This document shows positions 3,912 through 63,618 of a DNA stretch of 64,000 nt, in pieces. The position numbers and the translations under genes were made by a program. The notes beneath the pieces were generated by a model that saw only the letters and a program-made list of their open reading frames with translations, was not told the origin of the DNA and searched no databases. Numbering within the stretch: position 1 is the stretch's first letter; each line of letters opens with the position of its first letter. Source of the stretch: Lepidodermella squamata (taxonomy: Eukaryota; Animalia; Gastrotricha). Location of the stretch: positions 806,001 through 870,000 of the forward strand of contig JBLDXI010000001.1 in NCBI GenBank assembly GCA_047495785.1. Reading direction: 5' to 3'.

Positions 3912-6900
3912 TAGGATGAGCGCAACAGCTTTCTCTCGAACTTTTTATTCCTCATCCCCAGTTATAGGTATAGTAATAATCGCTTCTTTGAATAGAAAAA
4001 AATAAGATAAGTGAACTGGAGTGAATCTTATGGCTATATTTGACAGGTTGCTCTTTATTCGTGCGCTGCTGGCTGTCAATAATAAAATAGTAGAAAAAAG
4101 CGAAGATCGATAGAAAGTCGGCGAGTGACCACGGGCGAGTGTGGCCGCAAATTAATTCACACGGCCAGTAAATTTCGAAAAAAACTCTACTAGGAATTAA
4201 GGCGCACAATCAAAATCGTATAGTAATAGAATAATAAATAGAGTGCCGCAGATTCACGCCCCAGATTTATAACACGCAAAAACGTCACGCACAACAATTC
4301 ATGAATAAGATTTGGCTATAATAAATTGTCCGAACAAATTCGGCTCGTTTTCAAACAGGTATCAGTAACTTTATGATCAACGATCACGGTGCAAAGGGAT
4401 GAAGCTAGGATGGATTTTAATTCGTGGCTTGTTTGCCGAAAATCCCGAAAAATTGGCGCGCTTCCGGCGATATTATTTGCTAGACGCTTACAAATTTTAT
4501 TGCTGTGATTGTTTACACATCCCTAAGATCTATTTGTTTTCAGTTTGGTGATTGTTGTTATCCGCATGCATATAATAGGATTTTGCCGAGAGATCACATG
4601 AGGTAGTTCAATACAATCCTAAATGTTTTTACTATTATTAAAAATCTAGCATCGGATATTGCTGATTTTCCTAGCTCGATCTCGACTAGACTTCTACCGA
4701 AATGCACCGGTGGGAATTGCTCACATTCAGGCTAATACGCCGCGTCTTCTTGGCCGTTGACCAACAATCACGATAATGGCGGGGCAATTAATGAAAGAGA
4801 ATGGCTATTTTCATACAGATAAGCATGGTCCCAACAATCGCTGACGATGAATAAATCATAATTATGCTAAAACAATTGCAGAAAGTAATAAAAAAATATT
4901 TCGAGGGAAGAGAGATGATGACGTGTGGCAAATAGGGGGAGCTCGCCTCAATTCGACGTGAAATCACCCGTGCGTAAATAATTACGCTCGCAAAAAATGC
5001 AGATATCCAAACGTTAATACGCGCTAATTAGGAATGTTGTCGCAAAAAAATGCGGTGGGTACATCATGAAAATTAACACGCTTCGGTTCCGGGAAAAGGG
5101 AAAACACTTGAATGCCTGCGTAAAACTAGAGTGCTTAAGAACAAATGCCTGTGACTATAATATAGTAATTTGATGAGTAAAATAGAGCAGTTCAAGGTAC
5201 TAACTCATAAGATTTATTTTTGATAAGTGAAAGGCGTCAAATTTCGTGCGTCGCTTTTCGCAAAGCTAGTTTTGAACTATATATTCGCAAGCAATTAACA
5301 CAAATTTATATCTAACAAAATGTTAAAATCCGAGGTTAATATATTTTATGTACATACCACAGTGACTTTTATGCATCTTGCAATTAAACAAATTGGCAAA
5401 AGCCCGGACCGCAAGTTTGTAAGATGATTATTGAGAATCAATTCCTACCTACCACCTCTCGCGTGATGGCACTGTCATTAATAATGGTTTCTAATGATTA
5501 TTAAGTAGTTTGCTGCTTCCTCCAGCAATTGATCTTAGCGCATGGCTATTTACGTGGGCAAGTGCGCTGTCAAGAAATTTATTTACGAAACGCGGTAAAT
5601 AATAATATTTATTCGAATTCCTTTGTGATGTGCGAAAAGGAACGCTCAAGTATCTTCGATTAGCGCATCTTGGAAATCCCGTCGCTGTCTCGCAAATAAC
5701 ACGTGTGTTTTCTTCGCGTAGACGGAGCAATTTTTCGTGATGCGTAATTTAATTAAGTATAAGCGCCGCAAAAAACTAACGAGTCTTGGGATGCGCCAAC
5801 GTACGAGTTTACCTGATGGGACAGTGTGCTAATTCCTAGAATGATAGAACTCTCAAGTCATGCCAAACAACAGTGTCGGGTGAAGTTTTAGATCGCTAAC
5901 CGATTATAAAGATTAATTCTCAGAAATGTCAATTACGGAGATCAGTGGGCCCTGAAAATCTAAAAATGGGCGATAACAATTGACAAGCACGTTTTATAGG
6001 CACCTGAACAAGATCGTTAGAAGTTAACATCAAAACAAGTAAATTTGCCCGCTGACTTGAATTGACGCATGTCTTAGGCCAGCACGTGGTAAAAAGGCGA
6101 TAATAATTGAGTCAGAGCGCTAAAAGCTTGGTGCTGGAAAGGACAAAAAATCAGCATTTCCGCGATGTTTTTTTTGACAAAAATTGGTGGCGATTGCTCA
6201 TTTTTAGCCGTGTGGTAGAGCGGCAGCGCGTCCCTTCGCTTTTCTTTGACCTAAAATTGAATTGTGTTCAATTGCCTGGCGTCGCATGTGCGGGTTTAAG
6301 CGTCTGTGTTGCGGTAATTCTTTGCCCTATAGTAAAATTTTAATATTATATAGGGAAAATAATAAAATGCGTCCGAGTAAGTATAAAATGTACGATGTGA
6401 TATATTATAATATAAAACTCAAGTTGTTATACACCCTATACCCGAATTCTAGAACCGGAAAAACATAAAAAGGCTGTTGTGCTTTCGTTTTCTATTTTAG
6501 ATACTCGTAAAAGCCCGGATATACTTGCCAGCGCCCAGGTACTCGAGTTTTCAGTTCATTTCACCTCGCAGGCATCGAAAACGTTGTATCCTCAGCAAGG
6601 GTCAAAATATAGGAAAATAATTAGTAGTAAAACTGGGACGGCAAATACTTGACGCAGCAATCAATTTATTATTTTCCAATCACAGCATGCATTTCATCTC
6701 GATGCAAAGTACGAAGCGAAAAATTACTGGGTTAATAATTACTAAATTAGGGAAAATCTAGTGCGTCTAGCCCAAATACCCCATCTGCTACCGCATAAAA
6801 TCTGTTCTCGTGCGAACTCTCAACAAAAATAATGAATTGAAAATGAGGCTAGAATAAAGTAAAAAAAAATAAAGTCGTACCTAGCAAAAGCAGAAGCTAA

Positions 6901-7295
6901 ATAGATGGAAAGCAGTATGAGTAAATTTTATTGCCATCTTTCTGGAAAAAAGACGCGGTCTGTTCGCAAAAGTTGAGACAACCGCAGGAAAACCGATACC
7001 TTTGTGCTTATCAGTCTTAATGAAGAGATGCCAATATATGAATTTTGCCAGGGGTCGCCATGGCTCATTTATTCCAACGGAAATCAAGGTATCAGTTATC
7101 TTTTTGTCGATTAAGCGCCTCACAAGATGGACTTTCACAAGAAAATGAAAATCCAAGTCTATGCCAAGCTTTTATGCGATCTGTGTTCTTTACAGATGGC
7201 CCAGATGTGGACTAATTAAAAAGAGATTCGGAACATAGCACGATAATTTATTTTGAAAATGTATCAATTCATCACAATTAAATAAATATTTAGCC

Positions 7296-10105
7296 TCAAA
7301 GTGTTTTGGAAATGTCTGAGAAAAATCGTTGCACGTCATTTTGCGTCACTTCGATGCGAAGTCCGGGATACGAAACGCGAACCAACTCCTCGACGGCTGA
7401 AAACTGCACGAGAAAGACTTCCTGCAGACGGCCGAAGACAACGGCCAGCGTCGCCGTGTCATCAGTCAAATTCTTCCGCAACCGTTCGCAAACGGCTGTC
7501 AACTGCTTTTGCAACTCCTTGTGGTTCAAATTATTCGCGATCAACTTGTGCATTTCAGCTCGGCTGAACTGAGCTTGAAAATGAACTTCCTCCGCCTTTA
7601 CACCCCGAGAAATTACCGCATTTGCGTTTTCAACAAACGTAGTCAACGACGGCATGACTGGTTCCAATGCATTTGAGACTAGAATGTGAAGCTCTCGCTG
7701 TTGATGCTCTCTCGCTGACTTTCGCTCCGCCTCCAGCGTAGGGATGCGCAGCTCACTCAGCACAGAGTACAGTAGATTGAAATTCTCCATCAAAACAACC
7801 GCAGGCATAACTTTCTGCTGCTCGTGGGCAACGCGCCCCAGCTGAGCAAACACGGTCGATAAAATACGCCCATACGCTTTATCTACATCAGCATGGCGGT
7901 GGCCGACAATCGAGAAAACCGCCTCGGCTTCGCGTGCAAATGACTCAAACTGCCCAGCAAAAGGCAAAAGACCGACGCGTTTCTTCTTAACAACTGAAAA
8001 TTGCTCCATTGAAGCAGTTATAGCAGTCACATTAGCATCAAACGCCCGTTTTGCCTAAAAATAAAAGAAATTAAAATTGAATTGAAAAAGAAATGAAAAA
8101 AATCCTCCTTAAAATAATTCAAGTTCTAACAAAATTCGTCCAAATCCTCCAAAAATATTGTAAATTTTAAACAAAAATCCTCCTTAAATTATTGTAAATT
8201 CTTACATGCAAAAGGGTTGATGCTGCTAATTTTTGAAGACCTTGGTCGTTTTTCGCTTGCAACGAATGAGTCCAATCAGTCAGCCGAAGCAGAACATAAA
8301 TAGAATTCAACGAATCCTGCCGGTCGACAAATGCCAGGAAATTAATGAGATGGTTGCCAATCTCAGCCGTGTGAAGCAGGGTTTCAGTCAACTGCGCGTC
8401 TGATTTCGATCTCAGAAACGAATGGCAGAAATCTTTCTCACCGAAGTACCACGTCTGGACGTTTTCAAGCAGTAAATTCGTGGCTCGAATCATCGACTGG
8501 CGATGACTGTCTCGGTGCATGTCACTTGAAGCTAGCGACGTCGACGATTTCGACAGCGCTTTCTTCCGGCCATAATCGCCACTAGACATCGAAGCGCGAT
8601 CAGCAGCTTCGGTCAACGTACCAGCCAGGCCGTCGACTAGTGACTTGAACTCGGCCATCGCGACTCTAGCGAACTTGTCGATGTAAGTATTGGCTAGGGT
8701 TTGGGCGGACTCGGGACTGACAGTTGACAGCCAATCGACTAAATCCGCGTAGATTCCCAGACTGCTATGGGCTGGTTTGTGACTCTGAACTCGCTCATTA
8801 AAATTTTGCTGCTGGGCTGCTAGCAACAGGCTATTAGCCTGCTGTAGAATCGTGTTGTTAACGTTGTGGGAAATCGCTTGAGCAAGCGACATTTCGAAGT
8901 GGTGTAGGCGGCGCTGTTGATCGGCGATGAATCCCATTTTTTCGAGACCCGACGGAACTTGCAGGGTTTTAATCCGCCTCAATTCACGGGCGGCGGCCGA
9001 GACTTTCTTTATGCCGGCTGTTGATTTTAGATCAGGCGTTTTCAACGTCAAAATCATGTCAGGCGGCATTTCGTAGGTCGCGATCACCGAGTCGAGGAGG
9101 TGCGTCAACTGACTGATGTTGTGCTGCTTCACCTGGACCAGCGTGTCACGGTCTTGCAGTCGCGTTAGCTGGTCATCGACACTCATCAAAACCGACATGT
9201 ACTGCTCAATTTTCTGCTCTAGCATAGTAGCCTACATTGAAAATGATAAGACGGAATTCGTACCAAGTAATTAGTATAGCTCACCTGTTTCTCCGCTGAA
9301 CTGACAGTGCCCATCAAATCATTCAACTTCTCATCTGCCGTGATGATTGAATAAATGTTAGCACCGTCGAGCCCCTAAAATTGAATAAAATTAAAATTAA
9401 ATAATGCCGAAATGGAATTTATTACGTCAAGGCATTCTTTCAGATGTTGAGTGAATCTTTCCATGTTACCCAACGCGTCGTCAAATTTGGCCATGCATTT
9501 TTCGAGGCTAGCTTCCTCTTTCTCAGACAGCTGGCTTTGAAGGGTTAACAACTTGTCCCGGCCTTCACCACTCGCGTTTTTGCTTTTAGCGTCACTCGCT
9601 GCGAACAGTTCACCTTGCTTCGATTCGACAGCGGATATGATTCTTTCAGGGACGGATTCAAACAGAGGTTTCTGGCCGAGCATTCGATGACAAAATTTCC
9701 ATAGCATCGATAGAAATGCGTCGGCTGTTTCATGGCTCAAAAACACGAATCTGAAATGTTTGTGCTTCAAATCAATCTGATTCTTGAATGCGAGTGGTAA
9801 TACCTGTAAGCCTTGTGGAAACTAAGAACGAGTGAATTGTCTTCGTCCAGATCCTTGGCATCAACCATTTTCAGTTGGTCCAAGGTCCATTGCTTTTTTA
9901 TTTTGAGTTTGTCCGATTTCTCAGCATTTTTGACCACGCAAATGTGAACTTCTGGTGTTGTGGAAACCAGTGTTGTCAAGCAAAGAATGATTTTCTCGCC
10001 TTTTCGGGAGACTTGAGCCGACTTGCTGGGCTTGCACACTTCCGCAGCCAAGATCACGTTCTCTTCGGCTGCGGCAAATAATCTTGTTTGCAGTTTCGCT
10101 TCCAT
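7296..10105 (-). CDS. EXOC1: Exocyst complex component 1 (Sec3), multi-exon
   Basis: N-terminal Sec3 PH-like segment (KKQWTLDQLKMVDAKD...SFHKAY). The C-terminal segment KKKRVGLLPF..FESFAREAEAVF...DKAY...VVLMENF...EEVHFQAQFSRAEM...YPG matches the metazoan EXOC1 C-terminus. The four ORFs plus a small exon near 9285-9375 are joined by GT-AG introns. Confidence 0.9.
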
Positions 10106-10459
10106 GTGAATAACTTCAAATTCATGAACTATTTGACAAAGAAAGTGATTTCAGAGAGCGATGACAGCTGTGAGCTTTATTTCAGCATACAAATCAACGA
10201 AAACGTATCATCTCTACAAAATGAGCAATACGTAATAGCATCATTCCTCACAGTAACGCTATATCTCTCTCTCATTCTCTCGAAATAGCTCACCACGTCA
10301 CTCCATGTGTACTAGTGCAGGTAATAATAGTAGGTAGCACAGAACGAACAAAATATACAAGTTGCTGCCCGAATGTTCATCCACAATTAGAAAACTTCAA
10401 ACGAAAATCCGAGGCCTGAAAACTGTGGCGTCATAACAAGAGAAACTGGTGTGGAACGT

Positions 10460-11356
10460 CTAGAATCCACCTCGGTAACCACCGCGGCCACCACCACCAC
10501 CGCCGCCTGAAATTTTACAAATCAGTTATGAAATGATCAACAAATTAATGAAATGCATTACCTTGCGGGCACTCGCGAGAAAAGTGACCAGGCTCACCCT
10601 TTAGTGATAAAAAAAAAACTAGAAAAGGGAGGAAGAGGTAAACCATCAACTTACGCAGTTGTAGCAGGAGCCGCCACCACCACCGCGGCGACCACCACGA
10701 CCTGAAATAGAGGAAAACAATGAATACAAACTCATAACACTAGTTGAACTAATTTCGTAGTTGGATTAAAATCTCGAAACATGTTGATTGTTCTTACAAT
10801 ACTACGGTGAAACTTTAAAAACTCATAACTCACCGCCATAACCACCGCCGCCGCCGCCACCACCGCCAGCGTTGGGGCATTCTCGAGAGAAGTGACCGAA
10901 GCCACCCTAATCACAAATACGATTATCACAGCATGAGCAAATGGCAAAATAACTTACGCAGCTGTAGCAGCCGCCACCGCCTCCGCCACCTTCAAAGTTT
11001 CCAGAAAAAAAGATATATCATTGGAAAGGGTGAATAGACGTAAAACTACCACGAGGACCACCGCGGCCCCGGCCACCACGGAAACCTCCGCGGCCACCGC
11101 CATCGCGCTTCTGACCAGCAACTTCGACGCGGACTTTGCAGCCAGCGACAGTTTGGCCGTTCAAACTTGAAGCGGCTTCATCGGCGCAGTCAGCGCTTTC
11201 GAAGGTGACAAAACCAAAACCAGGTCGGTCACGAGAAATCCACACTTCAGTGACAGTGCCAAACTTGGCAAACGCCTCCTCAACTTCGCCCTCGACGGTG
11301 TCTTTTTCAAGACCGCCGACGTAGAGCTTGCAACCGTTATCTCCGCTACGCGCCAT
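10460..11356 (-). CDS. Glycine-rich RNA-binding protein: SRSF3/7-like RRM + two CCHC zinc knuckles + RGG boxes (6 coding exons)
   Basis: RNP2 LYVGGL and RNP1 PGFGFVTF. Spliced exons give CYSC|GGFGHFSRECP and CYNC|GEPGHFSRECP. Ends GGRGGYRGGF-TAG (10460-10462). Confidence 0.85.
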
Positions 11357-53530: not shown

Positions 53531-54770
53531 TACTGGTATTGTAAGCTATTTGGTCAGTGATCGCATTCGCAATTCGGTACCCGCGCTTGCCAATATGACG
53601 CGCGCACGCCTGAGTGAAAAAATAGTAGTGCAACGCGATCGATACCATGGAGCTTCCTAATAACGATAAATCGAATGACAATAATTACTTTCAGTTGTTC
53701 GAGTACTTGAGCTATTTTTATTTTGCCGAATCCGGTTCAAGGTGATTTTTGATAATATAATGAATTAGATAGAGCGCTTCTCGAGTTACACAAATTCGTT
53801 TTTGAGCAGCTATCAATGATTTTTCGATATTTTCAATGGAAAAGCAACTCTCGAAATTCTTCAATTTTTCCAAGCTCCTCATTAAAAAGATGAATGAACT
53901 TCGCCCCCTGCACTAGTATCATTATACACTAGCTGATAACAGTCGACAACAATCAAATTTTGGGCATGTCGGAAAACGCACCTTTGAATGGCGTTTTTTT
54001 TATTAAAACCGAGGTGCTAATTTTGTCAGCGCTGCGATCAATTTTTCGGTTAGCCTCACAACTCACAACAAAGAAAACACGATCTGCACGTCTGATGAAC
54101 TCATTAGCTCATAATTGTTGACTCCATGTCTAAACAGCTATGTTTGCATAACAACGCAAAAAAGAGTTCTTGCTTTTTCTCCGCAAAAATCCAACAGGAA
54201 ATTGATTTTAAATAAATCGATTAATTTGGTAAAATTTATGAAAATTCGAAGAGTTTTTAGTGATTTCTGACTATTATTTTGAATCCAAACTTTATTACTC
54301 AAAGTTTTAAAGCAATCGATGCGCGTGCTCACCCTCATCCCCGCACGCGTTTTATTCTGCGCGTGAAAATTCGCTGAAGCCACTATCGCGTCCCAACTTG
54401 ATCATCTCCAATCCCAACTTGATCATCTCCAATATGAAGTCGCGTGCTATTTCGGGCCGCCTTAATTTTCGCTATCATTCTATTGTGTCGCCCGGCCGAT
54501 TTATTAAACCGCTGTTTGAATGAAACTTATTACCAGCTCTCAACACCATCAGAGATAACGCTGTGTCACTAGCAACGGCGAGCGAATGACCTACTTTTTC
54601 TCTAGCTGGCAGATATTGCAGGCTGCGCAGGTTAATTTCGGACATTTTATTACATGCTCGTGGCTCTTCATCATAGTCCTTTAATTGCTCTTTTTCCGCG
54701 GCTAACAGCTTATACATCATAGAATTGGTTACCCTTCATTTCTGATAGAGTAACGTCTTTGATCTCAATA

Positions 54771-55760
54771 ATGCCCGGTGAATCAAAAGGCGAGGAAAAA
54801 CTCAGCTTAGTCTACTTCGACGGCCGAGGACGAGCTGAGGTCATTCGCTACTTGTTCGCTTATGCTAACATCGACTTCGATGACGTACGCATTAACATGG
54901 GCGAATGGGAAACTATGAAATCAGGTTTGCTGATAGCAATCACCTCAACGGTGTTCATTGCTCTGAGCTTCTATAAATATTCTTTGTATTTCAGATCTAC
55001 CATACGGACAACTTCCTGTGATCAAAATTACGAAGAATGGCGAGCTTGTTCGGATGATGAGCCAGAGCAGCGCTATCCTGCGTACTTACGCTCGCATGTA
55101 TGACCTGGCTGGCGATTCAGTGGATGCGTTTGGACTTGCCGACGAGATCTTTGAATGGTATGTATTATATCTCGCTGAGGTCTTGAGAATTTCGACAATA
55201 ATTCGTCTAAAGCACCCGCGACATTTATGAAGCAAGTGAAAAGTTAGTCTGGGAGTGTGACCCAGCGAAGAAAGTAAGCTTGGCTGATATCAAGTCTTCA
55301 ATTTTCAATGGTTTTTTGCGCAGGAATCGGCTCTCATTGAACTTCCGAAACGTCTCAATCGTTTTCTGGCTGTTTTTGAAGAAACCCTGAAGAAGAATGG
55401 CGGCAAGTTTCTGCTCGGCGGAGAAAAGGTTTAGTCAGATTATTCTACGCCGTGTGGCTGATATGTTATGACACTAATCGTGATATAGATTTCATTCGCT
55501 GACCTCGCGGTTGCTAGTTTCCTGGAAGACATGACACTGGAACAGAGTTACAAAATCTATGAAGCGCTTTGTGAGTTGTGAATACCGCTTTTCAATGGCC
55601 CCAAAAATGTCAATTCATTTTTACAGACACCCGCCCGCCGTTGATGACAGAAGATGACATTCGCAAGAAATACCCACGTTTGGCCGCACTTAAGGATGAC
55701 ATCGAAAACTCACCTGGTATCAAGGCTTATCGAGCCAAGCGTGTCTTGACCGGTTTCTGA
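54771..55760 (+). CDS. Glutathione S-transferase, sigma-like, copy 2 (6 exons)
   Basis: Same exon structure as copy 1 and near-identical coding sequence. Confidence 0.92.
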
Positions 55761-56811: not shown

Positions 56812-57982
56812 TTAGTCAAAGCAGACAGTTTTAACAATTTCCGCCGATACCAGATACGGATCAGCGTTACCAGCCGGTCGGCGGTCTTCGAAGTAACCGC
56901 AACCACTCTCAGCACATCTCGTCGGAATTCGAACACATGCGTCGCGGCACCCAACTCCCCACCGAAACTGATCCATATGACCACCTAAAATCCTAATTTT
57001 GTTCTCCTCGCCGCCTTTCAGGTCGTATATCGCCAAGTGCTCAGGATGCCGCTTTTCCAGCTTTTGACAAGCCTCCTTAATTGATCTGTTAATATTATTA
57101 AATTTATTAAAAATATTCGCGAAGGGCGACTATCAAAACAAACACTATCCCGATATGAGGAGTCCGCATTTCTTGAGTAGAAAAGTTGAAGTGCGCCCCC
57201 GTTGTGTAGTGACTCCCGAGTTCGGCAACCGGCTTCGGTGCCATCGTGAAGTCGACGCCGAAATCTTCGCAAACTCGCTGTAGGATATAGCGAGATACCC
57301 ACAGGTGATCGCCGGCCAAAATACCCTCACATGGGCCGACTTGAAATTCCCATTGAGCGAGAACTGACTCCGCATTTGTGCCATCAATTTTAAGGCCGGC
57401 GTAGAGGCAAGCTCGAAGGTGGGAATCCGCAACATAGCGACCAATGACCTTCACGCCACCAGCGCCACAATGACTGGGACCTAAGCCTTGTCTGGGCAGA
57501 CCGCCTTTCGGCCAACCAAGCGGCTCACCATGAATGTCGACTAGGATATATTCCTGTTCGATGCCGAACCATGGGTGAAGATTTTTAGCCTTATCCATAA
57601 CCGCCTTACATTTGGCGCGGTGATTCGTATGAGCCGGCTCGCCATTCTTCATGTAAGTTTCGCAAAGAACGAGTTTATTACGCCCGCGGAGATGCGGATC
57701 GCGGAAAATCGCAACAGGCCTCAGGGTCATTTCAAGAATATCGGATGTGGCCCTATCCATAGGGTTTGACAGGGTGATTGATTCCCATTCTGGGAGGTGG
57801 GAGACGTCTCTTGGCTCAAAGTCCAATATCTTGCTTTTCCCACGCATTTGATTGCCGGCAAAGGGGCAGACCCAGATGTAGGTGGCAATGACTTTGTCGT
57901 GGCCACAGTCCAGCTCGGCATACCGTTCGTAGACAGCATTGCTGAGAACTGAATTTTTCGACTCGAATAGCAGTCCAGACAT
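56812..57982 (-). CDS. Glutamine synthetase type II-like protein, divergent copy 1 (2 exons)
   Basis: ATYIW, PVAIFRDP, KLVLCE, PWFGIEQEY, ACLYAG..I.GTNAE...QWEFQVGP, HFNFST, VRIP, GYFEDRRP. Confidence 0.9.
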
Positions 57983-58381
57983 TCTGATATCGCTGAAATT
58001 CCACAATTTTAGATGTGCAACAAAATTAAGAAATCACATGATAATGAGCACAGAGCCCGGGCAGACGGCTATAGGGACTGGCGATAAAGTTTCTGCATGA
58101 CAAATAGGATATGACATTTGGAATTTTTTGCTGCTCTGGAGGGCAAACAGCCAGAACAAACATTTCCCTACAGACGCGATACAGCAGTCAATAAACTCAG
58201 CAATGTCGTTTATTTTATATTTTGCAAAAATCGGTGTAGGATCCATCATATATTATTATTATACATATACTGTAAGGCGAAAAATCGTGATTGAGAAATA
58301 TATCGCTGAGGAGCTATACAGTATAATGCAAGCAACCAGAGATATAAATTTTAAGGCACATTTTCCGGGTCATCATCAGAA

Positions 58382-59552
58382 TTATTCGTCCAAACAGGTT
58401 GTTTGAACAATCAGCTGGGTGACAACGTAAGGATCAGCATTGCCAGACGGCCTGCGGTCTTCGATATAGCCACTGCCGACCTCGGCGCATCTGCCCGGGA
58501 TTCGAACTGATGTTGATCGCGTTCCGATGCCCCATGTAAAGTTGTCTCGTTTCGATTTTGAGAGTCGCGATTTGTTCTCCTCACCACCCGTCAAATCGTA
58601 CTTTTCCAGGTGAAATGCGTGCTTTTTCTCCAATTTTCGACACGCATCTTCCATAGCCCTGGAAAATAAAAATAAATAAATTAAGCCAAAAAAAACAGTC
58701 GTGAAAACCCCACTTTAAGCCACCAGGTTTGCGCATTTCTTCCGTTGAAAAATTGCAATGAGCCCCTGTGGTAAAGGCTTCGTCAGCCTCCTTAACCGGC
58801 TTCGGCGCCATTGTATAATCGACCCCGAACTCTTCGCAAACTCGCTGGAGAAGATAACGAGCGACCCAGACGTGGTCCGGCACTGTGATACCTTCAGCTG
58901 GGCCAACTTGGAACTCCCATTGCCCGGGTACAGCCTCGGCATTTGTGCCGTCGATTTTAAGACCGGCGTAAAGACACGCGCGAAGATGAGAATCGGCAAC
59001 GTAGCGGCCAATGACCTTCGCCCCACCAGCGCCGCAATGGCTCGGGCCAAGACCCTGCCTCGGGATGCCCCTTTTAGGCCAGCCCAGCGGTTCCTTATTC
59101 ACATCCACCAAAATAAATTCCTGTTCGATACCAAACCAGGGATGGAAGTCTTTCGCCTTTTCCAAAATTTGCCTGCAGGTAGCTCGATGGTTCGAAGCTG
59201 GTGGTTCGCCGTTTTTCAAGAAGGTCTCGCAAAGGACCAGCTTATTCTTCCCCCTTAAAAACGGATCAGGAAATATTGCGACAGGGTGGAGGTAAAGCTC
59301 AAGTAGGGTTGAGTGCATATCTGTGACGTCTTCCATGGTTACAGCATCCCATTTCGGCAGTTGAGCTGGGTCGGTTGGTTCGAAGTCTAGCACCTTACTT
59401 TTGCCTCGCATTTGGTCGCCGAAGAACGGGCAAACCCAGATGTAAGTCGCGACGACTTTGCTGATGTCTTTGTCCAGCTCAGCATATCGGTCGTAGACCC
59501 TGTGGCTGAGTACGTTATTCTTGGACTCAAGCAGAGAGCCGAAATTTGACAT
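58382..59552 (-). CDS. Glutamine synthetase type II-like protein, divergent copy 2 (2 exons)
   Basis: Same motifs and same intron position as copy 1. Confidence 0.9.
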
Positions 59553-59981: not shown

Positions 59982-60926
59982 ATGCTATCAGCTGTAACAG
60001 TGGTTGTAGCCATTTCTTCGTGCATTTCAATTTTGCACGCGGAGCCACCTCAACTGGCTCCTGGTGTTGGCGCTTCAATCGGTCGCCAGTGGTATCATCA
60101 GCTGGCGTCAAACAATTCAACAGCCATGGTCGAATTCGTAAATTCATTGCCGACGCTCTGTTCATCAAACGACGCCGCGGAAGATTTGCCTGTTCGAATG
60201 ATGGCCGCCTACTACGACGCCAATAAGTTGGCGCAACCCGACTGCACCGAGCCGACGTTCGATTCCTGCATGGTTTCCATTGGCGGCGATACCCTCAAGC
60301 GATGGCTGGAGTTTCGCTATCAAGCGCCGTATGTGTGCCAATTTATTTCTTACCAAAATCAATCTTTAATAGACCAACTTGACTCGCTCCTTGTAAATTC
60401 CCGGTATTATGAGCAAATTAAGGTGGCGATTGAGAATTTTTTTATTCGTTGCGCCATATCTCAAATTTTCTGGTTGCCCAAGATGGAAAATGAGTTTAAT
60501 ATTGCCCGTGGGTTAGTTTACGTTTTCCTTATTACAATCGGTCTTCTATTTGCTTGCATCTGCTCGAAAGTATTGATAGTTTTCGCATTGCAAATGACAT
60601 TAGGGGAAATTCTTATTTCAATTTCGTTCCTACTAACTGATGACATCGTCAATGATAACATCTCGCCGCATCTGATCTGCCTTATTTTTCGTTACGCCCT
60701 TACTGTGCGCTTTCTTTTCTACAACTGTCCCAAAAACTCGGAAATAGGAAAGCTTTTAATGCTAGTGAAATGCTGCGCGAAACAAATTGTTGTGAATTCG
60801 CGAAAGCGAAAGGCGGCTACTTTCGATGAAGAAGCTCTCGTACCCGCATTAGACAGTCCGCCGAAAAATCCGCCTCGCAGAACAACTCGTAGTTCTAATG
60901 CTTCAAATCGTAATAACGCTGCTTGA
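59982..60926 (+). CDS. Signal peptide + Cys-rich luminal domain + TM segments; putative Kar5/GEX1/Brambleberry-like protein
   Basis: LPTLC...PDCTEPTFDSCMVSIGGDTLKRWLEFRYQAPYVCQFI spacing resembles the Kar5/GEX1/BMB Cys-rich domain. It is followed by helical and hydrophobic segments and a basic tail (RKRK, RRTTRS). Single 314-aa ORF. Confidence 0.5.
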   Translation: MLSAVTVVVAISSCISILHAEPPQLAPGVGASIGRQWYHQLASNNSTAMVEFVNSLPTLCSSNDAAEDLPVRMMAAYYDANKLAQPDCTEPTFDSCMVSIGGDTLKRWLEFRYQAPYVCQFISYQNQSLIDQLDSLLVNSRYYEQIKVAIENFFIRCAISQIFWLPKMENEFNIARGLVYVFLITIGLLFACICSKVLIVFALQMTLGEILISISFLLTDDIVNDNISPHLICLIFRYALTVRFLFYNCPKNSEIGKLLMLVKCCAKQIVVNSRKRKAATFDEEALVPALDSPPKNPPRRTTRSSNASNRNNAA

Positions 60927-61324
60927 AACTGTTCTCTCGTCTATTTTGAACTAACAATGTCTTTTTTGAGAAACTAGCCCACTTCTGTAATTTTTCGAGT
61001 CTCAATCTCTTGTACAGTTCGGTTAAAGTTTTGCCGCCGCTTTTTTCAATTATTCGCGAAGGTTACTTATTACTATTGTTATGAAAAATGACAGTCTTGT
61101 TTTTCGGCTGAACTAACAATTTTGATTTTGTGAGCTTGGGAACTTTTACTTTCAACGTAAATTGTTGCTTTTACGTGGACGTTTTTTATGATGTATAAAA
61201 AATAAAATCACGAGATTTCGGCTCCATGGTTGAAGAAAACTTGGAAACCGACAAGCTTTCAATAATTAATTTTTGTGTTTTTTTGTTATTTAGAGCTTTG
61301 TTTTACATTGAAATTCTGCATCGC

Positions 61325-63618
61325 ATGGCGGTTTTTCTGTCGCAAGCCGCGCTCGACAACCACGTTCGCGCAGAGATCTCGCGCCAGATCCCGGCCAGCT
61401 TCGCCGATTCTATGCTCGCGGCGACTTTGGTACCGCCGATCATCACCGCTCCGTTTATCGCCCCTTCAGGGTGCTTGCAGTCTCGGTCGGAAATTTGCCT
61501 TTTCCCGACAGTCCCGTTCTGGGCACAACAACAAGCAGCTGCCTATCAAATGCAAATGCAGTTTCAGCAAGCCTCCTCGAGCTTTTTGCCATCTTTTTCA
61601 CCCTCTCCGAAGCCTAAAGAGACCGGGCGCCGCGAAAAAATCTGCCGCTTTTGTAACACCAAGCGAAGCAGCAACCACTTTCAACGGCACGTTCGGAATT
61701 GCAAAGCGGCGAAAGCCAGGAATGTCTCGATGGAGGAGCGCGAAATTGCCGCCACTATGGGCATCACGGCGGAAGCCCGCGACCGCGATGCCCTGCTAGA
61801 AAAGGTGTCATCCAAGGTCGCCAGTGTCGTGTCTAGAGGCCTCTCACGCGAGATACGGCCAATCAAGTGTCCGAATTCTGTTTCGAAACTTCCCGTCATC
61901 GTCGAGCGACCAGCTACATCGACTACGTCGGGCCAGCTTAAGCAATGCAGCGAACATTTCAAGACGCTAATTGAGCTGTATCACGGTGGTAGTCGCTACA
62001 GATGGCTGCCCAAGAAGAAATCGAATACCAGGAAAGCAAAGAAAACTCGTCTCGCGTCGATTTTCACTCTATCAAGGACCTACAACCTCGAACAACTGGA
62101 GAGTTTCGACCACTGGGATCGATTTTTCGAGTCGGGTGGCGCCATCTTACGTTTGAATCAGCCGAAAGTTGTCAAAAAATCGAAGGGCAAAAGCAAGCCG
62201 GCTACAGTCGGTCGCCGTGCCCAGTACTCTCGGATCAAAGAGCTAGGCGACTTTGTTTCCTGGCTTGCGGCGAATGGTCACATCGTCGAATCTCCGAAGC
62301 TGAAATCATTGCTCTTGGATACAACGTCGCAGCTTCTCCAAGGCTCAAAACGAGAAAGCGGCCTCAAGAAAACCGAAAGAGCGAAGTTTGCCCATGACAT
62401 GGAGCTACCGATGAAATTTTACCAGCACATCGACGAGCTGATCGCTGAACGCCGAAAGGGGCTGAACCTTTACGGGCTCAAAATCGCTCGAATTGCAGTT
62501 GCGGCCAATTCTCATACCGGTTGCCGGTGAGTAACAGCTTCGTCTTAATTTTTCAAAGATTCAACAAACGTGAAAAATTTTTTGTAATTTTTTATCGATC
62601 ATTTAAATTATTTTTCCAAATTCCATTTCACGTCAAAAAGCATAAATTTCTAAAAAAAATCGTGCGATCGGGAATTTTTCAAATTTAATTTTAATTTAAT
62701 TTGAGGGCAATTTTCAAGTTCAAATGCATAAATTTCCAAGGTTGAATTTGATCGGAAATTCCATCAATCCTTAAAACAAACAAATCACCGATTCTGGAAT
62801 CGATTATTCGCTTCAGTTTATTTCGCTCAAGTATTCAAATAATTTGGTGCTCACCACCGATTCAGAGGTGGACAAAATATTCAAGGTTTTATCATTTCCA
62901 GCTTTTTCATCGTCATTTTTTATTTTTCAGAGCTTCTGGAATTCGGAAAATGAAACTTACTGAGTGGAAAGCGAGGGATGGCGATGCTGATGGAGAAGGT
63001 TGGGTTTGTGTTGAGGTAAAAGGAATGAAAAACTCGATTTCTGGATTCCCGTTCGTCACCTTCGACCCCGCAACAGCCGCCTTAATTCAAAGCTACATCG
63101 ATAATGACCGGCCGGCGTCGAAAAACAAGCGGGTTTTTTTGACTCAAAAACGAACAAGAATCAGTTCCTCGACGCTGAACGAGTACGCAAACCTCGGTTG
63201 GCCGTCGTTCAAAGAAAAGTTTCAGCCGAATTTCAGCCGGCCGCTCAGTGATACCTTTACACTTACCACCCAGCGCCGAGCAATCAATACTACTACGCGT
63301 TCAGAGAAGGACCCCGACCAGCCGCCTCAGGCCAAAGTTAATCAGGCGTTGGTGCAAAGTGAGCCCACGGGCGAGTCGGTCTATACCCTCACCGCTGCAG
63401 TTTCGGAGGCGATCGGGGTCGCAAAATGGGCGTACTACAAGTGTGCGAACCGCCTTGATCCGTCGAACCCAGAGCTACGCCCGTTCGCATACAGGCCTGT
63501 CAAAGCCGTCCCGCTTTCATCAAACAACACCGAGGGGTCTAAGGAGTCGAAGGATAGTGAAGACGAAAATTCCTCGAGCGAAGACGAAAATTCCAGCAGC
63601 GACGATGACTGCTGCTAA
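61325..63618 (+). CDS. Tyrosine recombinase (Crypton-like/metazoan YR element) with N-terminal zinc finger; intron 62527-62930
   Basis: Splicing CG|gtgagt...tttcag|A restores HTGCRASGIRKMKLTEW (catalytic R). Then VKGMKN (K), YIDNDRP...VFLT, TTQRR (second R) and LVQSEPTGESVY (Y). CRFC..FQRHVRNC finger at the N-terminus. Confidence 0.75.

What the first reader, a model, noticed from the sequence alone, without database searches (positions are those of the whole stretch)
56812..59552. Two glutamine-synthetase paralogues that have lost the ammonium site: candidate new gamma-glutamyl/amide ligases
Compared with the canonical eukaryotic GS II motifs (human numbering from memory), four segments have changed. 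WNFDGSS (D63, S66) became WESITLS / WDAVTME. GPYYC (Y162) became GPSHC. WNGAGCH (N248, G249) became HYTTGAH / AFTTGAH. RLTGFHETSNINDF (E305 flap) became RILGGHMDQF / RLSKSKRDNF, a 4-residue deletion that removes the Glu. The metal/ATP residues (EQE, NAE, WEFQ, H, R..RIP, EDRRP) are intact and both frames are open. Established: bacterial GS-like enzymes such as PuuA and GlnA3/GlnA4 alter these sites and glutamylate organic amines, and gamma-glutamylation of biogenic amines is known biochemically in some invertebrates. Inference: neofunctionalised ATP-dependent ligases. The two copies differ most in these loops, which suggests different substrates.
Basis: partly seen in the sequence, partly recalled or inferred. 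Interest (0 to 1): 0.8.

Follow-up and report, generated by a model that had tools for sequence, protein, structure and literature searches.

The report
Glutamine-synthetase copies without ammonia site
Two neighbouring, expressed and selectively maintained copies of the animal glutamine synthetase gene keep all the machinery for activating glutamate with ATP but have lost the residues that handle ammonia, so they probably join glutamate to some other amine, which would be a new enzyme type for animals.

Summary
Two tandem minus-strand genes, GSL-B (59552..58382, 371 aa) and GSL-A (57982..56812, 370 aa), each with one short intron, encode type II glutamine synthetase (GS II) homologues.

- **Ammonium site lost.** Asp63, Tyr161/162, Trp247-Ala250 and the Glu305 flap (a 4-residue deletion) are replaced.
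- **Ligase core kept.** All ten metal-, ATP- and glutamate-binding residues I checked are intact.
- **Expressed.** Both genes are transcribed and spliced as modelled.
- **Under purifying selection.** GSL-B differs from a second strain's transcript by 33 synonymous and 3 non-synonymous changes. Four of the synonymous changes lie inside the new AFTT motif.
- **Not orphans.** A 20-kb metagenome contig from another eukaryote carries an orthologue with the same Ser-His, Phe-Thr-Thr-Gly and flap-deletion features. It sits in a cluster with a canonical GS and two further divergent copies.
- **Similar cases elsewhere.** Core-intact, ammonium-site-less GS II paralogues are also annotated in a mite and a snail.

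Most likely these are active ATP-dependent ligases using a nucleophile other than ammonium, plausibly an organic amine. No substrate is shown, and a regulatory or non-catalytic role is not excluded.

This scan had already flagged a third such copy about 1.6 kb beyond this window's end (s1-379616). I could not read that DNA.

The parts
58714..59552 (-). GSL-B exon 1 (codons 1-279 plus 2 nt). It encodes the N-terminal beta-grasp domain and most of the catalytic domain.
   Evidence: The ORF and sequence were read directly. It matches Drosophila and human GS II at E 1e-77 to 1e-73. A 1220-nt cDNA contig of run X1 covers it.
58659..58713 (-). GSL-B intron (55 nt, GT..AG, phase 2).
   Evidence: An X1 contig skips 55 nt here, with CT..AC ends on the + strand, at depth 104.8.
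58382..58658 (-). GSL-B exon 2 (residues 280-371 plus the stop codon). It contains the shortened flap and the R319, R324, E338 and R340 equivalents.
58202..58381 (-). GSL-B 3' UTR. An AATAAA lies about 15 nt before the cDNA end.
   Evidence: The X1 contig ends at 58202 and is followed by the SMART cDNA adaptor sequence. The AATAAA was read.
59319..59351 (-). GSL-B remodelled N-terminal loop, W68-D78 (WDAVTMEDVTD), which replaces canonical WNFDGSSTGQ. Asp63 becomes Val and Ser66 becomes Glu.
59037..59042 (-). GSL-B Ser171-His172, which replace Tyr161-Tyr162.
58767..58778 (-). GSL-B A259-F-T-T262, which replace W247-N248-G249-A250.
   Evidence: The replacement is shown. All four codons differ synonymously in the X1 transcript.
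58538..58570 (-). GSL-B shortened flap (SRLSKSKRDNF). It is 4 residues shorter than canonical RRLTGxHETSxIxxF, and His304 and Glu305 are absent.
57144..57982 (-). GSL-A exon 1 (codons 1-279 plus 2 nt).
   Evidence: The sequence was read. It matches human GS at 7e-80. X1 contigs lie on it.
57086..57143 (-). GSL-A intron (58 nt, GT..AG, phase 2, the same position as in GSL-B).
   Evidence: An X1 contig joins 57085 to 57144, skipping 58 nt with CT..AC ends, at depth 3.9.
56812..57085 (-). GSL-A exon 2 (residues 280-370 plus the stop codon).
57752..57787 (-). GSL-A remodelled N-terminal loop, W66-D77 (WESITLSNPMD...). Asp63 becomes Ile.
57470..57475 (-). GSL-A Ser170-His171, which replace Tyr161-Tyr162.
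57200..57211 (-). GSL-A H258-Y-T-T261, which replace W247-N248-G249-A250.
56965..56997 (-). GSL-A shortened flap (IRILGGHMDQF). It has a 4-residue deletion and Glu305 is absent.

Best explanation
GSL-A and GSL-B are functional, cytosolic enzymes derived from GS II. They most likely still bind ATP, two metal ions and L-glutamate and still form the gamma-glutamyl-phosphate intermediate.

The small, acidic ammonium pocket of canonical GS is built from the Asp63 loop of the neighbouring subunit, Tyr162, Asn248 and the Glu305 flap. In these copies it is rebuilt into a different, more open and less acidic site. The attacking nucleophile is therefore no longer free ammonium. The most plausible candidate is an organic primary amine (biogenic amine, polyamine or xenobiotic amine), which would give a gamma-glutamyl amide.

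**Shown:** the fold, the intact ligase core, loss of the ammonium residues, transcription, splicing, purifying selection, and conservation of the new motifs in an orthologue.

**Inferred:** that catalysis is retained, that glutamate is still the acid substrate, and that the new nucleophile is an amine. His172, in place of Tyr162, is a candidate general base replacing Asp63; this is speculation.

A and B are in-paralogues that differ in the N-terminal loop, residues 246-248 and the flap, so they may prefer different substrates.
For: - **Homology and fold.** The proteins match solved GS II structures at E 1e-73 to 1e-80. An AlphaFold model of GSL-B residues 1-279 (mean pLDDT 83) superposes on human GS with TM 0.81-0.84.
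- **Core kept, ammonium site lost.** All 10 core residues are kept: E134, E136, E196, E203, H253, R299, R319, R324, E338 and R340. Of the 5 ammonium-site residues, 4-5 are changed. Residue roles come from PMC5192420 (D63 accepts the proton, E305 stabilises the intermediate) and PMC5485471 (R340, H253 and R299 bind glutamate).
- **Same positions as proven amine ligases.** The equivalent positions are replaced in the proven gamma-glutamylpolyamine synthetases GlnA2 (S53E, Y179D, N264P) and GlnA3 (Y179A, E327T) (PMC8998196). GSL-B even shares the Ser-to-Glu change.
- **Expression.** Spliced cDNA contigs exist for both genes, and an X1 contig ends in a SMART cDNA adaptor, which marks it as cDNA.
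- **Selection.** GSL-B shows 33 synonymous against 3 non-synonymous differences. A versus B gives dN 0.25 with saturated dS.
- **Orthologue.** Gene g1 on contig L081 is 54% identical and has S-H, F-T-T-G, the same 2-residue insertion and the same 4-residue flap deletion. The clade (A, B, g1) has support 100/97.
- **Recurrence.** Among 220 divergent or sampled GS II proteins, 23 have at least 3 of 5 ammonium positions changed with all 10 core residues intact. These include annotated proteins of Oppia nitens and Pomacea canaliculata.
- **Matching biochemistry exists.** ATP-dependent gamma-glutamylation of amines is documented in spiralian animals (PMC6454038, PMC9547800, PMC7954447).
Against: - No activity, product or substrate is known.
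- Asn248 and Gly249 also contact the glutamate alpha-amino group in bacterial GS (my own knowledge), so glutamate binding itself may be altered.
- The loops that would define the new pocket are the least confidently modelled parts (pLDDT 53-69).
- The active site lies between subunits, so a monomer model says little about it.
- The full-length spliced proteins could not be folded, because no reference exists for them.
- Expression is shown only by assembled contigs of one run, and that run's RNA status is inferred from an adaptor.
- Retention of core residues is also compatible with a ligand-sensing, non-catalytic role.
Confidence: 0.5

Rival explanations
1. They are regulatory or non-catalytic subunits. 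GS II active sites form between neighbouring subunits of a pentameric ring. A paralogue that co-assembles with the canonical GS encoded in the same cluster would therefore insert its Asp63-less loop into a canonical neighbour's site and tune or poison it. Alternatively, it could act as a glutamate/ATP sensor.
For: - The loop supplied to the neighbouring subunit (the Asp63 region) is the most remodelled part, and Pfam Gln-synt_N no longer recognises the N-domain.
The same arrangement is seen on L081.
- In the sampled GS II relatives, 27 ammonium-site-less proteins have also lost core residues, so pseudoenzyme outcomes do occur in this family.
Against: - All ten metal, ATP and glutamate ligands are retained in A, B, g1, g3 and g4 despite long divergence. 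A pure scaffold would be expected to lose some.
- The new pocket residues themselves are conserved between organisms, which fits a substrate site better than simple loss.
Confidence: 0.2
2. They are active enzymes with a different chemistry than gamma-glutamyl-amine formation. Possibilities are a different carboxylate substrate, an amino-acid or hydroxyl/thiol nucleophile (for example gamma-glutamyl dipeptides), or release and cyclisation of gamma-glutamyl phosphate.
For: - W247, N248, G249 and A250 are all replaced and a 2-residue insertion is added next to the glutamate site.
- The flap that closes over the glutamate entrance is shortened.
- A conserved new Trp appears in the F-x-W-G motif.
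Against: - R299, H253 and R340, the residues cited as binding L-glutamate in human GS (PMC5485471), are intact.
- GlnA2 lacks Asn264 yet still uses glutamate (PMC8998196).
- All characterised GS-like enzymes I could find in the papers read use glutamate plus an amine.
Confidence: 0.2
3. They are still ordinary ammonium-dependent glutamine synthetases with unusual sequences.
For: They show clear GS II homology and an intact ligase core.
Against: - Both residues given catalytic roles in the second half-reaction (Asp63 and Glu305; PMC5192420) are gone.
- These positions are 97-100% conserved in 120 canonical invertebrate GS proteins.
- A canonical copy is reported nearby in this genome (s1-379616) and exists next to the orthologue on L081.
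Confidence: 0.07

Closest known systems
Canonical eukaryotic glutamine synthetase type II (human GLUL, PDB 2qc8/2ojw/8dnu; Drosophila Gs2, PDB 7cpr)
   Same: The fold is the same, and sequence identity is 43-50%. Both metal sites, the ATP-binding Asn-Phe-Ser and Arg residues, and the glutamate-binding R299, H253 and R340 are shared. Length is about 370 aa and there is no signal peptide.
   Different: Asp63, (Ser66), Tyr161/162, Trp247-Ala250, Arg298 and His304/Glu305 are replaced or deleted. There are three small indels in the active-site loops. The N-domain no longer reaches the Pfam Gln-synt_N threshold.
Streptomyces coelicolor GlnA2/GlnA3 gamma-glutamylpolyamine synthetases (and E. coli PuuA), GS-like enzymes of the GS I lineage
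   Same: The logic is the same: the Glu, ATP and metal sites are conserved, and substitutions fall at the S53, Y179, N264 and E327 equivalents (human S66, Y162, N248 and E305) (PMC8998196).
   Different: They belong to a different GS class (type I dodecamers of bacteria). GSL-A and GSL-B score only 23-30 bits against the NCBIfam gamma-glutamylputrescine synthetase model, whose cutoff is 650. The resemblance is therefore convergent, not orthology. The bacterial enzymes keep Asp50, whereas the GSL proteins lose its equivalent.
Gamma-glutamylhistamine synthetase activity of Aplysia (EC 6.3.2.18) and gamma-glutamyl conjugation of monoamines in gastropods and annelids
   Same: It is an ATP- and L-glutamate-dependent amide ligation to an organic amine in spiralian animals (PMC9547800, PMC6454038, PMC7954447). 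That is the reaction predicted here.
   Different: In the papers I could read it is known only as an activity and as metabolites. No gene is named there, and nothing links it to GS II. The window's organism is not a mollusc, and no gamma-glutamyl amines are known from it.
GS-like gene cluster on ENA metagenome contig L081 (g1, g3, g4 plus canonical g2)
   Same: Gene g1 is the orthologue of A and B: 54% identity, the same S-H and F-T-T-G motifs, the same insertion and the same flap deletion. The cluster also contains a canonical GS.
   Different: It comes from a different organism (GC 38%, with no other synteny). Gene g1 is a single copy there and lacks the A/B intron. Genes g3 and g4 are two further divergent types that are not seen inside this window.

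Membership tests
Glutamine synthetase type II (glutamate-ammonia ligase, EC 6.3.1.2) | GS II sequence homology and fold | tested here: met
   phmmer against PDB GS II chains gives E 1e-73 to 1e-80. The model superposes on human GS with TM 0.81-0.84. The best NCBIfam family is GlnII.
Glutamine synthetase type II (glutamate-ammonia ligase, EC 6.3.1.2) | Two metal sites (E134, E136, E196, E203, H253, E338) and ATP/glutamate-binding R299, R319, R324, R340 | tested here: met
   All ten residues are present in A and B by alignment to a canonical GS profile and in the HMMER alignments to human GS.
Glutamine synthetase type II (glutamate-ammonia ligase, EC 6.3.1.2) | Asp63 (ammonium deprotonation) and the Glu305 flap (stabilises the intermediate) | tested here: not met
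   D63 becomes I in A and V in B. E305 is removed by a 4-residue deletion in both. Residue roles come from PMC5192420.
Glutamine synthetase type II (glutamate-ammonia ligase, EC 6.3.1.2) | Remaining ammonium-pocket residues Ser66, Tyr162 and Asn248 | tested here: not met
   Y162 becomes H in both. N248 becomes Y or F. S66 becomes E in B. In A a Ser is retained or not depending on gap placement.
Glutamine synthetase type II (glutamate-ammonia ligase, EC 6.3.1.2) | Pfam Gln-synt_N (PF03951) plus Gln-synt_C (PF00120) | tested here: inconclusive
   Only Gln-synt_C is found in exon 1 of A and B, which covers the whole N-domain. All 120 best database homologues but one carry PF03951. The fold is nevertheless predicted to be intact.
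Glutamine synthetase type II (glutamate-ammonia ligase, EC 6.3.1.2) | Ammonium-dependent glutamine synthesis | not testable with these tools
   This needs an enzyme assay.
GS-like gamma-glutamyl-amine ligases (PuuA, GlnA2/3/4 type) | Glu, ATP and metal sites kept, with ammonium-site positions substituted | tested here: met
   One search compared with Table 1 of PMC8998196.
GS-like gamma-glutamyl-amine ligases (PuuA, GlnA2/3/4 type) | Membership of the bacterial GS I-derived clade (NCBIfam GGputSyn NF045547) | tested here: not met
   The scores are 29.6 and 22.7 bits against a cutoff of 650. GlnII scores 200-210 bits.
GS-like gamma-glutamyl-amine ligases (PuuA, GlnA2/3/4 type) | Glutamylation of an organic amine | not testable with these tools
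   This needs an assay or metabolomics.
GS-derived pseudoenzyme | Loss of metal or ATP ligands | tested here: not met
   0 of 10 core residues are changed in A, B, g1, g3 and g4. In contrast, 27 other sampled ammonium-site-less relatives do show core changes.

The most novel reading that the evidence does not exclude
GSL-A and GSL-B, their orthologue g1, and the similar core-intact paralogues annotated in a snail and a mite could be the unidentified genes behind ATP-dependent gamma-glutamylation of biogenic amines in invertebrates. That activity is the gamma-glutamylhistamine synthetase type, EC 6.3.2.18, which serves as the monoamine-inactivation route in gastropods and annelids. If so, they would form an unrecognised enzyme family that arose repeatedly, or once anciently, from animal glutamine synthetase.
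Probability: 0.22. Interest if true: 0.8.

Novelty: new variant of a known kind. Interest (0 to 1): 0.62.

Why it matters
GS-like enzymes that ligate glutamate to amines are established in bacteria. I found no paper in the searchable library that describes an animal GS II paralogue with a rebuilt ammonium site.

Gamma-glutamyl conjugation is reported as a main route of monoamine inactivation in gastropods, and it also occurs in annelids. The papers I read describe it only as an activity and as metabolites, without naming a gene.

This finding supplies concrete candidates that can be expressed and assayed:
- two expressed genes here,
- an orthologue in a second organism,
- similar annotated genes in Pomacea and Oppia.

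It is also a clean natural example of how an essential housekeeping enzyme is re-tooled, with the activation half-site frozen and the nucleophile half-site rebuilt. Automatic annotation currently labels these proteins "glutamine synthetase", which is probably wrong for metabolic reconstruction.

Tried and rejected
1. **Word-index search with GSL-B exon 1.** All 120 best hits were canonical GS at 51% identity or less, and none had GPSHC or TTGAH. I first read this as lineage restriction. That was too strong: the orthologue on L081 is split by a prokaryotic gene caller into 179- and 207-aa pieces, which rank low.
2. **JGI metagenome scan with GSL-B-specific peptides.** Nothing was closer than 48% identity.
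3. **Second word search with the g1 C-terminal piece.** Only g1 itself carries F-T-T-G, so the A/B/g1 subtype remains known from two organisms.
4. **Exhaustive profile search.** It gave the divergent relatives but no further A/B-type member.
5. **Synteny between the window and L081 by tblastx.** Only the GS genes match.
6. **Age of the family.** The position of the divergent clade among animal GS is an unresolved polytomy. An AU test does not reject an origin from the same lineage's canonical GS (p 0.063).
7. **Single origin of all animal ammonium-site-less GS II proteins.** This is unresolved, and long-branch joins were flagged. Moth proteins P0122 and P0135 turned out to change only N248. 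Ostrea P0200 and Intoshia P0124 also have core changes. I therefore do not count these as clean cases.
8. **Spliced leader at the 5' ends.** The contigs give no clear leader.
9. **Full-length folding of the spliced proteins.** I left this out because a spliced protein has no reference and long sequences must not be typed. Only exon 1 of GSL-B was folded.
10. **Neighbouring ORFs at 59982-63618.** They have no Pfam family.
Full report
**What is in the sequence**

The interval holds two head-to-tail genes on the minus strand.
- GSL-B starts at the ATG at 59552 and runs to 58714. It has a 55-nt GT..AG intron (58713..58659) and a second exon to the stop at 58382, giving 371 aa.
- GSL-A starts at 57982 and runs to 57144. 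It has a 58-nt intron (57143..57086) in the same phase and position, and a second exon to the stop at 56812, giving 370 aa.
- A tblastn of both proteins against the whole window finds only these two GS genes.
- The two proteins are 67-68% identical.

**Check of the observation**

HMMER alignments to solved human GS (8dnu, 2ojw) and Drosophila Gs2 (7cpr) give human numbering directly.

Residues kept in both proteins:
- the metal ligands E134, E136, E196, E203, H253 and E338;
- R299, R319, R324 and R340;
- the N-F-S motif.

Residues lost or changed:
- Asp63 becomes Ile in A and Val in B.
- Tyr161-Tyr162 become Ser-His.
- Trp247-Asn248-Gly249-Ala250 become His-Tyr-Thr-Thr in A and Ala-Phe-Thr-Thr in B, with a 2-residue insertion just before.
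- The flap is 4 residues shorter and has no Glu305.
- Ser66 becomes Glu in B. In A a Ser can be aligned there, so that position is ambiguous.

I then compared A and B with 120 canonical invertebrate GS II sequences.
- 144 columns are at least 95% conserved in the canonical set.
- 97 of these are kept in both A and B.
- The 47 changed columns cluster in the N-terminal loop (human 61-78), W-I-D-G 32-35, 157-162, 174-180, 197-199, 239, 245-250 and 295-306.

Scoring against a profile of canonical GS, 4 (A) or 5 (B) of the five literature-defined ammonium-site positions are changed. None of ten core ligase positions is changed. The pattern is therefore real and non-random.

Pfam still finds Gln-synt_C but no longer Gln-synt_N in either protein. 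An AlphaFold model of GSL-B residues 1-279 is nevertheless confident (mean pLDDT 83, pTM 0.84). It superposes on human GS at TM 0.81-0.84. Its low-confidence stretches are the remodelled loops.

**Are the genes alive?**

Run X1 is a cDNA library, because one of its contigs ends in the SMART cDNA adaptor at 58202. That 1220-nt contig covers GSL-B from its 3' UTR to residue ~33 with the intron precisely removed. A separate contig shows the GSL-A joint 57085/57144.

The X1 sequence comes from a slightly different strain or species label.
- In the GSL-B coding region, the 36 listed differences comprise 33 synonymous and 3 non-synonymous nucleotide changes. The non-synonymous changes fall in two codons, F111Y and P117A.
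- Four consecutive synonymous changes fall in the codons of the new A-F-T-T motif, so the motif is held at the protein level.
- The two GSL-A variants listed are both synonymous.
- Between A and B, dN is 0.25 while dS is saturated.

Both genes are therefore old, expressed and under purifying selection.

**Relatives**

The first searches found only canonical GS at 51% identity or less. An exhaustive profile search with the A/B alignment returned many divergent GS II representatives. Two of them (P0136, P0123) lie on one ENA metagenome contig. That contig, fetched as L081 (20.5 kb, GC 38%, with an actin gene), carries four GS genes in a row.

| Gene | Coordinates on L081 | Type |
|---|---|---|
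| g1 | 5417..4348, minus | orthologue of A and B |
| g2 | 7069..5941, minus | fully canonical GS (WNFDGSS, GPYYC, WNGAGCH, HET) |
| g3 | 8200..9323, plus | divergent type |
| g4 | 9666..10804, plus | second divergent type |

Gene g1 is the orthologue of A and B on these grounds:
- 54% identity;
- V-D-P-V-F matching V-C-P-F-F;
- M-S-H matching P-S-H;
- the same 2-residue insertion followed by F-T-T-G-x-H;
- the same 4-residue flap deletion beginning R-L-S-K;
- the N/D-A-D-P-Y ending.

Maximum-likelihood trees place (A, B) with g1 at 100/97. With fewer long branches, they place all five divergent genes in one clade at 100/99. A and B are thus in-paralogues of one gene in a diversified subfamily that sits next to a canonical GS.

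I could not read that DNA.

Where the subfamily branches among animal GS is unresolved. An origin from the lineage's own canonical gene is not rejected (AU p 0.063).

**A wider pattern**

I examined 220 sampled GS II relatives of at least 300 aa. This is a biased sample of divergent representatives.
- 23 have at least 3 of 5 ammonium-site positions changed with all ten core residues intact.
- 27 have lost the ammonium site and some core residues as well.
- Named core-intact examples are "glutamine synthetase-like" of the mite Oppia nitens (XP_054166545) and "glutamine synthetase 2 cytoplasmic-like" of the snail Pomacea canaliculata (XP_025112718).

Whether these share an origin with the A/B clade cannot be told, because the long branches are unresolved.

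**How it probably works**

In GS, ATP phosphorylates the gamma-carboxylate of glutamate. Ammonium then binds, gives a proton to Asp63 and attacks. Glu305 stabilises the intermediate and gates the site (PMC5192420). Glutamate itself is held by R340, H253 and R299 (PMC5485471).

GSL-A and GSL-B keep everything needed for the first half-reaction and lack both catalytic acids of the second. The positions they have changed are the ones changed in the Streptomyces enzymes GlnA2 and GlnA3, which were shown in vitro to glutamylate polyamines. Those positions are S53, Y179, N264 and E327, equivalent to human S66, Y162, N248 and E305 (PMC8998196). GlnA2 even shares the Ser-to-Glu change of GSL-B.

The new residues (Ser-His, an aromatic residue plus Thr-Thr, a Trp in F-x-W-G, and a shorter flap) are conserved between organisms. 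That fits a newly built acceptor site rather than decay. I therefore favour an active ligase that uses an organic amine or another non-ammonium nucleophile, with confidence 0.5.

The rivals are:
- a regulatory or poisoning subunit in mixed rings with canonical GS (0.2);
- a different chemistry or acid substrate (0.2);
- residual ordinary GS activity (0.07).

The N-terminal loop, residues 246-248 and the flap differ between them. The S-H, T-T and C-P-F changes are shared.

**Comparison with what is known**

By homology these are GS II proteins. By the tests for a glutamate-ammonia ligase they fail the ammonium-site criteria. They work like the bacterial GS-like amine ligases but are not members of that GS I-derived family: they score 23-30 bits against a cutoff of 650 for the gamma-glutamylputrescine synthetase model.

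ATP-dependent gamma-glutamylation of histamine and monoamines is documented in gastropods and annelids. The papers I read name no gene for it. I found no paper describing animal GS II paralogues with a rebuilt ammonium site. Another agent's unverified note (s1-421969) takes this genome for a gastrotrich, a spiralian. That would fit the taxonomic range of this biochemistry, but I did not test it.

**Verdict**

It is a new variant of a known kind: GS-like ligases, here derived from the animal type II enzyme. The scan had already flagged the third copy of the same cluster on neighbouring DNA. Interest 0.62.

Noticed in passing
window 54770-55760 (+): A multi-exon glutathione S-transferase gene lies convergent with GSL-A, about 1 kb from its 3' end. 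It has a weak GST_N match and a GST_C_3 match at 26.4 bits against a cutoff of 21.6. A conjugation enzyme next to the GS-like pair may be a coincidence.
   Followed up: partly
window 57991-58222 (-): The GSL-B cDNA ends at about 58202, 15 nt after an AATAAA. GSL-A's ATG (57982) is preceded by a TTTCAG acceptor at 57996-57991. The pair could be a trans-spliced operon. The contigs gave no leader sequence.
   Followed up: partly
L081:4348-10804: An ENA metagenome contig of another eukaryote holds four GS genes in a row: one A/B-type orthologue, one canonical GS and two further divergent types. A prokaryotic gene caller split all of them into fragments, which hides them from protein searches.
   Followed up: yes
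P0139 (Pomacea canaliculata XP_025112718), P0133 (Oppia nitens XP_054166545): These annotated 'glutamine synthetase(-like)' proteins of a snail and a mite have all five ammonium-site positions changed and all ten core ligase residues intact. The snail case is notable because gamma-glutamyl conjugation of monoamines is documented in gastropods.
   Followed up: partly
P0088 (Centruroides vittatus): A scorpion 'glutamine synthetase 2 cytoplasmic-like' protein has WQYAGCG in place of WNFDGSS, so Asp63 is lost. The rest of the ammonium site is near canonical.
   Followed up: no
window 56995-56997 and 58568-58570 (Arg298 equivalents): Arg298 is 96% conserved in canonical GS, and it is the residue mutated in PDB 9otp ('R298A decamer', beside the human GS filament entries). 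It is Ile in GSL-A and Ser in GSL-B. Higher-order assembly may therefore differ.
   Followed up: no
window 56935-57242: Run X2 holds two contigs over the same stretch, one identical to the window and one with 21 differences in 308 nt. This suggests two well-diverged haplotypes or copies of GSL-A.
   Followed up: no
window 59982-63618 (+): Three long ORFs (314, 434 and 222 aa) lie between the GS-like pair and the window's end. None has a Pfam family.
   Followed up: partly
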